DNA of 63,827 nucleotides, counting the filler, from Reticulomyxa filosa (Eukaryota; Protista; Foraminifera), in assembly GCA_000512085.1 (NCBI GenBank). It is 13 parts of 13 records of this genome, joined end to end, with 100 filler letters (N's around TTAATTAATTAA, not from the genome) between each part and the next. Parts side by side here need not be neighbours in the genome. Positions count along the whole stretch, not along the records: positions 2,897 to 8,819 come from ASPP01016970.1; 12 more parts are not named here. One strand, 5' to 3'. This document shows positions 2,897-8,819 of the stretch, one piece after another. Under the pieces are notes generated by a model. It was given only the letters and a program-made list of their open reading frames with translations. It was not told where the DNA came from and made no database searches. The translations under genes were made by a program, and so were the position numbers. How positions within the stretch are numbered: position 1 is the stretch's first letter; each line of letters starts with the position of its first letter.

Positions 2897-5800
2897 AACA
2901 ACAACAACAACAACAACAATCCATTGGACCCACTGCGCAAAATCTTGCAAAAGGAGCCCAAAGAGCGGGCCGACGAAGAGATCGACGCACTGGTGACTTA
3001 CTTTGACAATTACGACATTATGAGTCAAGACATTGACATATACTCGGGGATATCCACCTTCCGCGCTTTTATCCAAGAGACGCGCTATCGCGAGTATCAA
3101 GCACACAAGCAAATCTTTGCGCAGGGCGATTTGGGCAATGAGTTTTACTTCATCTTGACGGGCAAGGTGAGCGTATTTGTCAACGACGATTTGGCAGACA
3201 TTGACAGCGACGCAGGGGATCATGACCAAGAGCGTGAGAAAATACGTGAAGAGCAAGACAAGGACAAAGCACACCAAGATATAAAAGAAGAAGAAAAAGA
3301 AAAAGAAAAAGGAGAAGAAGAAGAAGAAGAAGAAGAAGAAGAAAAAAAAAAGAAGAAGAAGAAGAAGAAATAGTATCACCGACTTCGGATACAGTAGCGA
3401 TTCATGACCATGATGAGTTTACAAATGAAAAGACACCCACAAATAAGGATAAAGATAAGAATGAAGATGGAGAAAAAAATGAAGATAAAAATAAAGATGA
3501 AGAAAAAAAAGGTGACAATGTGGAAGACGAGGAAAAAGAAAAGCAACCGAAAGAGCCGACATTCGGACTGACGAATGTAAGTGCGTACATGCATCAAGCT
3601 CCGAAGCGCAAGGAGGTGGCGGTGCTGACGTCACACGACTTGTTTGGCGAGTTGGCGGTGAATGGAAATGACAGTCGACGCACAGCGACATGTGCATGTC
3701 AGACAAAAGTGGAAGTGGCGTATTGGACCAGAGAGACGTACGACAAGTACATTAAGCCATTGAAAGACAACAAGCGTAAGGCGTTGCAAGTGTTGCTGGA
3801 CAAAGATAAAAACCCGTTGCCGGAGGAGGAGTTGGTGCAAAAAGCAGCATTGTTTTTGGACGACGCGTTGCAAAAGCGACCGTTGAAGATGCATCGCACG
3901 AGCAAATGGCCACAAATGGTGCATCATTTGATTAACAGCACGTCGTTCACGTTTTGCATGTACGCGACGTCGCTGTTGCTGTTGAGTCTGGCGTTTGTGG
4001 AGCCTCCATGTTATGGGGACTATCGCGAAGGGGGTAGGTATACGCCGCGGATCGGACCACTGTTGGCATTGGAGTGGCTATTTTTCTTTATCTTTTTGAT
4101 GGAGTGTGTACTGCGTATGTATTCGTTTGGAACAAGGTGGTTTTTCGAAACGCCAATGCATAGAGCACGAGTATTGGCATTGTCGATTTTGGGATTGGAC
4201 TTATTGGTGGCGACGAGTCTGCAAGGAAGATCATTCCGTTTCAGTCGAGTGTTTCGACCAATGTTTCTGTTTATCTTCTTGAGGCCATTGCGACAGGCAT
4301 ATTACGTTGCAGTGCGTTGTCTGCCGGCGACAGTGGAGATTTTGTTGTTGACGCTGTTGATCATGGCCATCTTTACAAGATCCGGGATTCACATGTTCAA
4401 ATTCTCCAAAAACTTGTACCGACAGAACAACTTCACACACGGCCAATCACCGTATCACGATTTGGAAGGTCGTTGCAACGCACAGAGCTGCTTCGTTAAT
4501 CAGACCGACTGCTGCTACTTGGATCCTACCATCTTTCAGTCGTTTGACAGCTTTGCACGAGGGATGGCATCTCTGTACACTTTAATGACCACGGAAAACT
4601 ATCCGGATCTATTCTGGCCGACGTGGATGAATAATCACACATATTGGACCTTCTTTGTCATCTTCTTGCTTCTCATGACCTTCTTTCTCATGAATCTATT
4701 CAGTGCCGCCATGTACCACGCGCTGTATCGCATCTTGACCACCAACATTTGGGTGGAGGACGAACGCAGTGAGTCGGAGGCTTTACAGGCGGCATGGACA
4801 TGTTTGGACTCGGATTTTTTGGGGGAACTGTCTCTACATAAGTTCAAACAGCTGATGCGTCATTTGAAACCCAATTACACGGACGTGCAAAACACGGTGC
4901 TGTTTCGATTGCTCGGAGACTCCAATAACACTGGTCTGATCGACGAAGAGCAGTTCAGCATGAACATCCTCAGCATCATGTATCTCAATGTCACCAAGGT
5001 GCAGTCGCGCTCGCACTCGCGCAAGGAGCTGTCCCAAAAGTGTCCGTGCTGCACCAAGCAGCTGCTATTCAATGTCATCCGCATGTTCGAGAGTCGCTAC
5101 TACAACATGCTCAAGTGCATGCTGATCGTCTTGGACTGCGTGGCTTTGCTCGTGTATCACGACGCTTATGCGACATGTTGGATGATCGACACCGTGTTGG
5201 CATTTTTATTTGTCGTATGTACGATATGCGAAATTGTGTTTGTACATAGTCTACGTTGGAGATTGTTCTGGCCAGAGAGCTTGGAGGAAGGATTAATCAA
5301 CAAAGTTGAGTTTGTTATCGATATTGTGCATGTCGCTAGTGCCATTGTCGGCCTCACCGATGACACCACGTGGATTACGGCATTTCGCTTCGTCGCTCTC
5401 GGCAGGGCCTCCGTCATTGCCAAGTTCCTATTCGAAAATGTGCGCGGACTGCGATCCAGCATCAGTCATGTGCTCACCAGGGCCTTTCTTCGTATGCTCC
5501 CTGTGTTCTTTGGTCTGGTCTTGGCCTTTACCGTCGGATTCATGTACGTGTTTGCTATCATTGGCATGGAGCTCTTTAACGATCCCAACAAATTTGGCAA
5601 AGATCGCTGCAACGAGGCGGCCGCGTTAAATCACGATCCCACGGCCACTTTTTGCGATGCTCAAATGACCATCATCACGCTGTTCCATATCTTTTGCAGC
5701 AACAACTGGAATCTGGATATGACCTATGCTGTCAACTACTTTGATAACATGGCCGTCAGCTTGTACTTTATCCTGTTCCACTTTGGCGGCCCTATCTTCA

Positions 5801-6082
5801 TGCTCAACATGCTGCTCGCCGTCTTCTTCGAAATGTACTTTGAAATCTCACAGACGCTGGACTCGGACTGGGGGGCCGTCTTGGACGATAACCCGCAGGA
5901 CGATCCTGCTTATCCCAAGCAGACCGAAGGAGTCGACCCCCACGACGGTCATGAAAAGGACGACAGTCATCACGAAGGACAATTCAACAATAACAATCAT
6001 ATGGATACTGCAAAAGATAGTGCTATGAATATCATCACCACTGTTATTACTACTGATGACAATAATAATAATAATAATAATG

Positions 6083-6134
<52 letters not shown>

Positions 6135-7037
6135 TAACAATAACAATAATAATAATCTTGGATCCTCCAATGATCCGAAACATGCGTTACACACTGCCAT
6201 TGAAATGGGCTCTTCAATGAAAAGCGATCATCATCATGGACAGGAAGTGCACAAGCTCACCACGGCAAAGGACCTCGCCAAACACTTGTATTTAAACTTG
6301 GAGTTGCATAGCCTGGTTTTGCCCACCGGACAAAAGTTTGAAAACACATTCACTGGCAAACAAGCGGTGGAACACTTGGTGTCCAATGGCCTGGCTCCGG
6401 ACACGGAAAATGCTGTCAATATTCTCACACAAATCGTTTCTCACGAGGCATGTGCGGAACGAGTGGACCCCGGGGCGCCCAACGAGTTTGAAAACTTGCC
6501 GACGTCACATTACAAATGGATTGACCCGCAGCTGCTTGCGCCCAAAACTGATCACGGTCATGACCACAAGGACGGAGAACTGAATCGCACCGAAACCGAT
6601 TCCGATCTCTCTTCCAAGTTCCACATTGGCTTGAAACAGTCGTATGGAGGCTATCAGCATATTATGAAACGCACTCACACCATTGAAAGGATGCAAGTTC
6701 CAGGCAACCTTAAAAAAGCACGAACGATGGGAAATTTGTTGGCTGAAAATAAGAAAACTCCTGTTCCTAATCCTGTCGTAGATAAGGATGCTACCACTAC
6801 TTCGGATAATGATCAGGCCAGTAACACTGGTGAAGAAGTGGTATTGATAAACTATTCCTTTTTTTTTTTTTCCTCCTCTCCCCTCTTGTCTCTTTTGTGT
6901 ATACGTAGCTGTGAGAACATATTGCATTGGTGTGATTGTTTGATTACAAGGCACGGACAAAAGGTAGCAATCTACAACCAGACAGGGAGCGAACAGGCGT
7001 TCGGGGAAGTATCTCAAAACCGAAAGACAGTGTGTGA
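2897..7037 (+). CDS. Two-pore-channel-like cation channel with N-terminal cNMP-binding domain, EF-hands and C-terminal DEP domain (gene A, 5' truncated)
   Basis: cNMP domain: IFAQGDLGNEFYFILTGKVSVF...LFGELAVNGNDSRRTATC. Repeat I: LAFVEPP, S4 FRFSRVFRP, pore SFDSFARGMASLYTLMTTENYPD. EF-like loops DSDFLGELSLHKF and DSNNTGLIDEEQF. Repeat II pore TLFHIFCSNNW. DEP: NTFTGKQAVEHLVSNG...AVNILTQIV...FENLPTSHYKW. ORFs 2924 and 3520 join via one frame change at the A-run ~3342-3351. GT-AG intron 6841-6950, stop TGA 7035-7037. Confidence 0.88.
6061..6156 (+). repeat. (AAT)n microsatellite encoding poly-Asn in gene A
   Basis: Directly visible AAT/AAC run. Confidence 0.95.
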
Positions 7038-7676
7038 TATGGAGACTCTGACACTCAGCTTGAATATTTTTTTTTTTTCCCACATCCTCCTTTTACTCTC
7101 TTTTTTTCTTCCCCCCCCTCCCTTCTTTTGTGTGTAAATGGTTGTTTCATGAACTTTCATTGCCGATTTCGTCAAATACTGAAAACAAACTGAGTTGTAT
7201 ATCAGGTGGAAATTTTGTGCTACACAAAATACGAAATAAACAGCGTCTACTTTAGAAAGTCTTTAAAAATTTTTTTCAATACCGTGGAAACAAGGATTTA
7301 TGTTGAGGATTTCTTTTTTCCTTTTTTTTTTCTCTCACAATCTTTTCGGTTTTGAATTGTTTTCTTTTGTGTTGTTTTCTTTCTTTTTTTTTGTTGCAAT
7401 CAGAATGAAATCGCCTTTTTTGATGGGCTGAAATCTTGTTGATTATTGGCAAACGTCATTCATTGTTCATCCTTGTTTCTAAAAAGTGTTTGAAATCCTC
7501 TTGTCATCAGTGGTCAGTACACTAGTGTTGAATTTTGATACAGCAAACAACAAAAAAATATACACACATATTATACCTTCCCCAAATATTATACGTTCGT
7601 GTCCTACCACAGGTTCAATTCAAGTGCTCCCAAGAGTTTTATCCGTTCATCTAACGCTGAAAGGAAGGGAGTGACT

Positions 7677-8682
7677 ATGTTTCTATCGGAAACAGTGGCA
7701 AATTGCATAACAGTGGCAAACGAAGTAACATGTTTCGTGTTGGTTTGGTCTGTTTGGATTGTAACACTAGTAGAGCTAACAAAGGTGAGATCTGAGGAGA
7801 GCAACAACGGATCAAGCAATAGTAGTCGGACAAGTAGCTCAAGGAGTGAGCAAATGAGAAAATGTAACGTCCGCATATTGATGCCATCTTTGTCTCAATT
7901 GCTGTTTTTGTCAGATTTTTTCATCGTTTGCAAAACAACATTCTCGACAATCGACTGGGTATATTACCTTACACGTAAGGAAAGCCATGTCGTGGATAAC
8001 TATTTGATATTGGGCATGGATATATCTTTTGCAATGTCGCTATTGTTTATGCAACTAATGTTTGTGGAACGGTTACGTTCTACTTTAAGGCACAGTACAT
8101 TGGCCTATCCGAAGTGGTCGTACTGGCTGTTGAAAGGTGTTGCAATTGTTATTGCTATGACCCAATTCTTTATTGCTATTTCAGAGTTTTGTGGAATATC
8201 TGACTACGTTGCTTACTCTCTGGTCGTAATATGTATGTTGCTCTTCATTCAAACTCTTTCGGTCACCTATATGTTTTACCGCGCCTTGTCTCAAATCATG
8301 ATTGCTAGTGAAAACGCTGATGACAGTATGGCGCACGCATTGATTCGATTGGTTATTACTTCGCTTTTTGCTTTAGGTATGAATACTCATTTATTAAAAA
8401 AAAAGTCCAATTTTTGACAGATAAAAACACATAGGAAGTACGTCACTTATGTTAATTTTTGGTGCGTTTACATATGCGCTTTGCTGGTGGTGTCCCGTGG
8501 GTTATGTATATTTTTGGCTCTATTCTATTGACTCCGTTATCAATATTGCATGTTTATTGTTCAGTGTTAAATTTGGCAGAAAGTATTACCTCATTATTTT
8601 TGGAACTGTCCATAATTACTTTGTCAATAAGTTTAGAATGAGTAAGATGCTCAAATTTCAATCTAAAATCATACTCTCTTGA
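7677..8682 (+). CDS. Seven-transmembrane (GPCR-like) protein
   Basis: Seven hydrophobic segments; TM3 ends FVERL, TM7 YSIDSVINIACLLF. One GT-AG intron ~8377-8434; stop at 8680-8682. Confidence 0.7.
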
Positions 8683-8819
8683 TTTTTTGCTAGTCGTCAA
8701 TGTGTCATAAAATTGTTAGTTTTGCTATTTTTTCCACTTTGAGAAGGACTATCGATAGTTTTTTTTTGTGTTTTTTTGTTAAGTTTTTTTGCTTGAGTAC
8801 AATAAACCAATGACTAGCC

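What the first reader, a model, noticed from the sequence alone, without database searches (positions are those of the whole stretch)
2897..7037. Complete TPC with N-terminal cyclic-nucleotide-binding domain and C-terminal DEP domain
Seen: a cNMP-binding domain with intact phosphate-binding cassette (FGELA…RTAT) before two 6TM repeats with EF-hand linker, and a DEP domain after a poly-Asn spacer. Established: cyclic-nucleotide-regulated channels (CNG/HCN/KCNH) have a C-terminal CNBD on single 6TM subunits. Animal and plant TPCs are gated by PI(3,5)P2, NAADP, Ca2+ or voltage and lack CNBD and DEP; the CNBD+DEP pair is known from Epac. Inference: an independently evolved cyclic-nucleotide-gated TPC. 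RT rather than RA in the cassette hints at cGMP compatibility.
Basis: partly seen in the sequence, partly recalled or inferred. Interest (0 to 1): 0.85.

Follow-up and report, generated by a model that had tools for sequence, protein, structure and literature searches.

The report
Two-pore channels with cyclic-nucleotide sensor
A foraminiferan gene encodes a two-pore cation channel with a cAMP/cGMP-binding domain fused to its front end, and relatives in several protist groups share this apparently undescribed design, which suggests a second, independent way of putting an ion channel under cyclic-nucleotide control.

Summary
The architecture is real: CNBD, two 6TM repeats joined by an EF-hand pair, then DEP. 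The gene is not complete here. Its N-terminus runs off the piece's edge, and one frameshift (3250-3370, probably the A10 run) splits the CNBD inside a ~150-aa acidic insert. A Reticulomyxa filosa paralogue (RFI_08106, 73-77% identical) has the whole CNBD in frame with the channel. So do Nonionella and Elphidium proteins from EukProt. Both CNBD halves are under purifying selection, so an assembly error or an intron is likelier than a dead gene. All 16 CNBD-bearing TPCs in the tree form one clade (100/99): foraminifera, chlorarachniophytes, a euglenid dataset and unidentified environmental eukaryotes. No TPC outside it carried a CNBD. DEP is accessory: C-terminal, N-terminal or absent. The cGMP hint fails, because RT/RA/RS varies among close homologues. 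Best reading: a dimeric Na+/Ca2+ channel modulated by cyclic nucleotide through the CNBD C-helix, pre-S1 helices and EF/IS6. Binding and gating are inferred, not shown. I found no description in the open literature. New variant of a known kind; interest 0.74.

The parts
2897..2920 (+). Poly-Asn repeat at the piece's edge; the reading frame continues upstream, so the N-terminus is missing
   Evidence: frame A has no stop from 2897 to 3370; homologues have 235-460 more N-terminal residues
2921..3190 (+). First half of the CNBD (N-terminal helices, beta1-beta4), frame A
   Evidence: Pfam PF00027 2-34, E 6e-6; family HMM 2e-21; 79% aa identity to the paralogue, codon-position identity 0.85/0.93/0.47
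3191..3609 (+). Acidic low-complexity insert (~150 aa) in the beta4-beta5 loop of the CNBD
   Evidence: the paralogue has an in-frame insert of ~135 aa at the same place; Nonionella has only a short loop
3250..3370 (+). Interval holding the single frame change; the GAA repeat switches frame exactly at the A10 run 3342-3351; phase-compatible GT donors at 3234 and 3246 leave an intron possible
3610..3820 (+). Second half of the CNBD: beta5-beta8, phosphate-binding cassette (3643-3693), helices B and C, frame B
   Evidence: Pfam PF00027 38-85; PDB hit to a PKA regulatory subunit, E 9e-8
3844..3940 (+). TPC pre-S1 helices, directly after the CNBD C-helix
   Evidence: aligns to human TPC2 residues 46-80; the model of the Nonionella homologue has 9 residues between the C-helix and this helix
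3946..4800 (+). 6TM repeat I: IS4 with three Arg (4234-4260), filter I TTENYP (4588-4605), long IS6
4807..4950 (+). EF-hand pair in the inter-repeat linker; EF1 lacks the position-12 acid, EF2 has Gln at 12
   Evidence: EF2 is canonical in most non-foraminiferan members
5098..5835 (+). 6TM repeat II: IIS4 (5383-5424) with Val at the R3 position, filter II SNNW (5698-5709)
6061..6156 (+). Poly-Asn spacer
   Evidence: sequence
6268..6525 (+). DEP domain
6622..6687 (+). Conserved unnamed motif after DEP (GLKQSYGGY...), also in the paralogue and in Nonionella
6838..7037 (+). Probable intron (donor 6838 or 6841, T-rich, acceptor 6950 or 6908) and short last exon; unverified
   Evidence: local frame test only

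Best explanation
The piece holds most of a foraminiferan gene (very probably Reticulomyxa filosa) for a two-pore channel of a protist subfamily that carries one N-terminal cyclic-nucleotide-binding domain. Shown by computation: the domain order, the TPC fold, one clade of CNBD-bearing TPCs, and an intact G-E...R cassette in this copy and most members. Inferred: (1) the frame change is a homopolymer error or an intron inside the dispensable acidic insert, so the cell makes one protein; (2) it works as a homodimeric Na+/Ca2+-permeable channel (filter I T-E-N with a Cav-like Glu, filter II S-N-N like animal TPCs), probably on acidic vesicles; (3) cAMP or cGMP binds the CNBD and swings helices B/C, which in foraminifera lead within about ten residues into the pre-S1 helices beside the EF-hand domain and the long IS6 helix, the gate-moving element of TPCs. 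Cyclic nucleotide would thus raise or lower opening, in place of or together with the phosphoinositide, whose site is only half conserved. This copy is probably weakly voltage-dependent (Val at IIS4 R3). DEP is an accessory membrane- or partner-targeting module.
For: TPC identity; Foldseek top 17 hits all TPC1/TPC2, E to 1e-17. One polypeptide: the paralogue's contig has one stop-free frame 3-2408 over the whole CNBD and into IS5; P0003 (Nonionella) and P0005 (Elphidium) have cNMP_binding above cut-off (50 and 51 bits), 2x Ion_trans and DEP. Selection on both halves: second-position identity 0.92-0.93, third-position 0.47. The same assembly has another one-base frame change in the paralogue's IS5, bridged by the annotation. 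Clade: 16 of 16 CNBD-bearing cores on one side of a branch, UFBoot/SH-aLRT 100/99 (FastTree 1.0 with 94 rows). Cassette Phe-Gly and Arg are conserved in at least 90% of the aligned rows. The model has a canonical CNBD fold at pLDDT about 90, joined closely to the channel, pTM 0.76. PI(3,5)P2 ligands of TPC2 (Lys203, Lys204, Lys207, Ser322, Arg329; PMC6424560) read R, Q, Y, N, R here. Ile551/R3 rule: PMC6424560; Val here. B/C-helix rotation on binding: PMC5806680.
Against: No binding, current or localisation data. No reads could be listed to check the frame change. Several members have degenerate cassettes (e.g. P0164, P0054, P0013), so the domain can persist without a canonical site. The distance from cassette to pre-S1 helix is 66-87 residues in foraminifera, P0007, P0008, P0011 and P0158, but 139 in P0010 and 270 in P0157, so tight mechanical coupling is not universal. 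The 150-aa insert lies next to the base-contacting strands.
Confidence: 0.62

Rival explanations
1. The CNBD is real and conserved but does not gate the pore. It is a ligand-independent structural module (like the CNBHD of KCNH channels), or it binds nucleotide to control trafficking or partner binding, while gating is by Ca2+ (EF2), voltage or lipid.
For: Degenerate cassettes in several members; long variable linkers in P0010 and P0157; canonical EF2 and Arg-rich IIS4 in the chlorarachniophyte members; no C-linker to S6.
Against: Gly-Glu and Arg of the cassette are kept in most intact members across deep branches; the domain is kept throughout the clade while DEP comes and goes.
Confidence: 0.25
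2. The family is as described, but this copy is a recent pseudogene or null allele: the frame change is genuine and unspliced, giving a truncated half-CNBD.
For: The assembly shows a stop at 3371 in frame A; an intact paralogue could cover the function; no reads were available.
Against: This is the only lesion in about 1300 codons; it sits at a homopolymer in a GAA repeat; both flanks show strong purifying selection; the paralogue's contig has a similar one-base lesion; GT-AG pairs that restore the frame exist.
Confidence: 0.1
3. The 2924-3373 ORF is a separate gene, or the CNBD-channel join is a chimeric assembly.
For: Two separate ORFs in the ORF list.
Against: The two ORFs hold complementary halves of one domain; the same order is contiguous in the paralogue and in more than ten homologues from independent datasets.
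Confidence: 0.02

Closest known systems
Animal TPC1/TPC2/TPC3 (e.g. human TPC2, PDB 6nq0)
   Same: Two 6TM repeats, pre-S1 helices, EF-fold linker after a long IS6, Asn-Asn filter II; Val at IIS4 R3 like Ile551 of TPC2
   Different: N-terminal CNBD, C-terminal DEP, Glu in filter I, only two of four basic PI(3,5)P2 ligands; a separate clade from the branch holding sea-urchin TPC2
Plant TPC1 (AtTPC1, PDB 5e1j/7fhk)
   Same: Best structural match; EF-hand linker, with a canonical EF2 in many family members
   Different: AtTPC1 has no CNBD or DEP; the EF loops are degenerate and the IIS4 R3 Arg is absent in this copy
Protist TPC-related channels (TPCR) and Toxoplasma TgTPC
   Same: Divergent unicellular TPC clades; TPCR filters are described as closer to Cav (PMC12839299); TgTPC has a long N-terminus (PMC8490419)
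   Different: No CNBD reported for them in the papers read; named TPCR or TgTPC sequences were not in my tree, so the relation is untested
CNBD channels CNG/HCN/KCNH, SthK, MloK1
   Same: CNBD on a voltage-gated-superfamily channel; G-E...R cassette
   Different: Those are single-6TM Kv-lineage tetramers with the CNBD after S6, mostly via a C-linker (PMC5806680); here the CNBD precedes S1 of a two-repeat Cav/Nav-lineage dimer
[quoted passage not shown]
   Same: Two 6TM repeats plus CNBD in SAR protists
   Different: They are (6TM-CNBD)x2 duplicates of HCN/CNG-like subunits, not TPCs; that paper treats TPCs as a separate tandem family and mentions no CNBD on them
Epac1/2 regulatory region (DEP + CNBD)
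   Same: DEP and CNBD in one chain; two clade members (P0011, locus L007) have DEP before the CNBD; the CNBD profile hits Epac2 strongly
   Different: No GEF domain; DEP is C-terminal here and matches DEPTOR/pleckstrin better than Epac; descent from Epac is not shown

Membership tests
Two-pore channels (TPC) | Two homologous 6TM repeats in one subunit | tested here: met
Two-pore channels (TPC) | Closest by sequence and fold to solved TPCs rather than Nav/Cav/Kv | tested here: met
Two-pore channels (TPC) | EF-hand-fold linker after a long IS6; pre-S1 helices | tested here: met
Two-pore channels (TPC) | TPC-type filters (TTxN; xNNW) | tested here: met
   TTENYP and SNNW
Two-pore channels (TPC) | Homodimeric cation channel of endolysosomal or vacuolar membranes | not testable with these tools
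   inferred from family
Animal TPC1/2 subfamilies | PI(3,5)P2 site (TPC2 K203, K204, K207, S322, R329) | tested here: inconclusive
   R, Q, Y, N, R in this protein
Animal TPC1/2 subfamilies | Groups with animal TPCs in a tree | tested here: not met
   separate clade from the branch holding sea-urchin TPC2
Plant TPC1 | Canonical Ca2+-binding EF loops and IIS4 R3 arginine | tested here: not met
   degenerate in this copy; EF2 and R3 present in chlorarachniophyte members
TPCR (choanoflagellate/apusomonad TPC-related) | Groups with named TPCR sequences | not tested
   no labelled TPCR sequence among the tool outputs
CNBD channels (CNG/HCN/KCNH) | Single 6TM subunit with the CNBD C-terminal to S6 through a C-linker | tested here: not met
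Tandem CNBD-channels (dinoflagellate/oomycete) | (6TM-CNBD)x2 of the HCN/CNG lineage | tested here: not met
   one CNBD, N-terminal; TPC core
CNBD (CAP/PKA/PKG fold) | Eight-stranded beta-roll with helices A, B, C and a cassette Gly-Glu...Arg | tested here: met
   the fold was modelled on the Nonionella homologue because this copy is split
CNBD (CAP/PKA/PKG fold) | Binds cAMP or cGMP | not testable with these tools
   none
DEP domain | Three-helix bundle with beta-hairpin arm | tested here: met
Epac | DEP-CNBD followed by REM, RA and CDC25 GEF domains | tested here: not met
   no GEF domains

The most novel reading that the evidence does not exclude
A previously unrecognised, ancient TPC subfamily is directly opened by cAMP or cGMP through an N-terminal CNBD that acts on the pre-S1/EF-hand/IS6 gate. 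This would be a second, independent invention of cyclic-nucleotide gating, on the Cav/Nav-lineage scaffold, present in Rhizaria and possibly Discoba and lost from animals, plants and fungi, coupling cyclic-nucleotide signals to organellar Ca2+/Na+ release.
Probability: 0.45. Interest if true: 0.88.

Novelty: new variant of a known kind. Interest (0 to 1): 0.74.

Why it matters
The cyclic-nucleotide-regulated channels described in the papers read are Kv-lineage, with the sensor behind S6. Known TPCs answer to PI(3,5)P2, NAADP, Ca2+ or voltage. A natural TPC with its own N-terminal nucleotide sensor would add a new gating input to a family that is the structural intermediate to Cav/Nav channels, and would test whether the pre-S1/EF-hand region can act as a lever on IS6. 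It also gives foraminifera and chlorarachniophytes a concrete link between cAMP/cGMP and vesicular ion release. Intact, insert-free members (Nonionella, Elphidium, Amorphochlora) are ready for expression and patch clamp.

Tried and rejected
The ESM Atlas gave only generic TPC or CNG-type clusters below 0.9; it covers clusters of 50 or more members, so the blank proves little. The third homologue search (Ploeotia query) returned mostly Cav channels and no new CNBD-bearing protein. A first alignment run timed out. Rejected: cGMP preference from RT (varies T/A/S); an Epac-derived module (DEP order and affinity vary); 'complete' gene; separate transcripts. In one search short candidate 3' splice junctions were translated locally to test the frame only; nothing joined was sent to a search.

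Full report
Observation. The piece 2897-8819 has two overlapping open frames on the + strand. Frame A is free of stops from the edge (2897) to 3370, and frame B from 3250 to 7134. Frame A encodes the first half of a cyclic-nucleotide-binding domain (Pfam positions 2-34). Frame B encodes the second half (38-85), then two Ion_trans repeats (E 3e-39), a weak EF hand and a weak DEP. The best PDB sequence matches of frame B are human TPC2 and plant and mouse TPC1, with a PKA regulatory subunit matching the half-CNBD. DEP was confirmed by a five-sequence profile (DEPTOR, E 2e-10) and by a model whose top Foldseek hits are all DEP domains. The gene is not complete in this piece: it starts in a poly-Asn run at the edge, and the homologues have 235-460 residues before the CNBD.

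Source. The closest protein is Reticulomyxa filosa RFI_08106 (1460 aa, 73-77% identical). DNA identity is about 72% and third codon positions are near saturation (0.47). The window is therefore an old paralogue, very probably from the same foraminiferan; that attribution is inference.

The frame change. It lies inside an acidic insert of about 150 residues between strands 4 and 5 of the CNBD. The GAA (Glu) repeat changes frame exactly at the A10 run, 3342-3351. The paralogue's contig reads through the whole CNBD, a similar insert and the first channel helices in one frame (3-2408). That contig has its own one-base frame change in IS5, which the annotation bridges by dropping conserved residues, so such lesions recur in this assembly. 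Both CNBD halves of the window copy show second-position identity of 0.92-0.93 against 0.47 at third positions. GT donors at 3234 and 3246 are phase-compatible with many downstream AGs, so an intron is not excluded; a relative on locus L007 is interrupted at the same loop by what looks like an intron. No sequencing run was listed, so this stays unverified. The two pieces were searched apart and never joined.

Family. Full architecture (CNBD, 2x6TM with EF linker, DEP): Nonionella stella P0003 and Elphidium margaritaceum P0005 from EukProt, with Bolivina fragments covering it. CNBD-TPC without DEP: Amorphochlora amoebiformis P0012 and three close relatives (P0013, P0158, P0164), the Ploeotia vitrea (euglenid) transcript P0157, and environmental proteins P0007, P0008, P0009 and P0014. 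DEP in front of the CNBD: P0011 (two DEP stretches) and locus L007. DEP at the C-terminus in an unidentified member: P0163. In a tree of channel cores only, all 16 CNBD-bearing rows fall on one side of a branch with 100/99 support, in 100% of bootstrap trees (46 rows, 30 outside rows chosen across the 94-row FastTree). The only CNBD-less rows inside the FastTree clade are N-terminally cut fragments, near-identical to CNBD-bearing rows. No TPC outside had a CNBD by the family HMM. The tree is midpoint-rooted and most outside rows are unnamed, so the position relative to TPCR or plant TPC1 is untested. The euglenid record could be contamination.

Structure. The AlphaFold model of the intact Nonionella protein (residues 412-1445; pLDDT 86.8, pTM 0.76) shows a complete beta-roll with B and C helices, nine residues of linker, the TPC pre-S1 helix, twelve TM helices with a very long IS6 running into an EF pair, and a DEP fold. 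Foldseek ranks 17 TPC structures first (E to 1e-17) and finds the Epac regulatory domains for the CNBD part. The CNBD profile matches PKG, Epac2, PKA-R and SthK domains without a clear single donor.

Functional residues. Cassette: Gly-Glu and Arg are present here and in most intact members; the residue after the Arg is T here, A in the paralogue and S in Nonionella and Elphidium, so it gives no ligand preference. Some members are degenerate. Filters: TTENYP and SNNW; the Glu stands at the position of the Cav/bacterial Nav filter Glu (my knowledge), and a Cav-like filter is reported for protist TPCRs (PMC12839299). Of the PI(3,5)P2 ligands of human TPC2 (PMC6424560), Lys203 and Arg329 align to Arg, while Lys204, Lys207 and Ser322 align to Gln, Tyr and Asn. 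IIS4 has Val at the R3 position that decides voltage dependence in mammalian TPCs; chlorarachniophyte members keep Arg there. EF2 is canonical in most non-foraminiferan members and degenerate here.

Mechanism. Most likely a homodimeric Na+/Ca2+ channel in which cyclic-nucleotide binding rotates the CNBD B/C helices (as in HCN; PMC5806680) and pulls on the pre-S1 helices next to the EF domain and IS6, the helix whose straightening opens TPC2. Domain content, clade and residues are shown; expression as one protein, binding, coupling, direction of effect and location are inferred (0.62). The main rival is a CNBD that does not gate (0.25), favoured by degenerate cassettes and long linkers in some members. 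A dead copy is less likely (0.10).

Novelty. Eight literature searches bore on this, counting one on the R. filosa genome; with four papers read on prior art, none described a CNBD-bearing TPC. [quoted passage not shown] The library lacks most subscription papers, and automatic domain annotations of these proteins are public, so the claim is 'not found described', not 'unknown'. It is a true TPC by every feature testable here and not a member of the CNG/HCN/KCNH family: a new variant of a known kind. Interest 0.74; 0.88 if direct gating is shown.

Noticed in passing
window 7599-8417 (+): Separate ORF (272 aa) with at least five hydrophobic segments and no significant Pfam match, probably cut by an intron near 8380; looks like a multi-pass membrane or GPCR-like gene
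   Followed up: partly
L001:2165-2410: The R. filosa paralogue's contig has a one-base frame change in IS5; the RFI_08106 model skips about 24 conserved residues of the S4-S5 linker and S5, so the public protein is probably mis-spliced
   Followed up: partly
L007:1152-5581: Environmental relative with DEP and half a CNBD in one ORF and the rest of the CNBD-TPC in the next; the break lies in the same beta4-beta5 loop and looks like an intron
   Followed up: partly
L005:1171-7164 (P0011): Clade member with two DEP stretches ahead of the CNBD, an Epac-like order on a TPC
   Followed up: partly
window 3191-3609 and P0001, P0009, P0014, P0157: The beta4-beta5 loop of the CNBD takes inserts of about 100 to 370 residues in several separate branches of the clade
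   Followed up: no
P0180 (2030 aa, Logan): A long channel protein with more than two 6TM repeats and a DEP domain in its middle (about residues 960-1030); unidentified eukaryote
   Followed up: no
P0168 (Saprolegnia diclina SDRG_01746, 1429 aa): Appears to be two whole TPC units in tandem, each matching the full two-repeat profile: a four-repeat channel built from TPCs
   Followed up: no
window 6622-6687: Short conserved motif after DEP shared with Nonionella, no known family
   Followed up: no
P0163 residues 267-325: Weak Ricin_B_lectin match (E 0.001) in front of the CNBD in one environmental member
   Followed up: no
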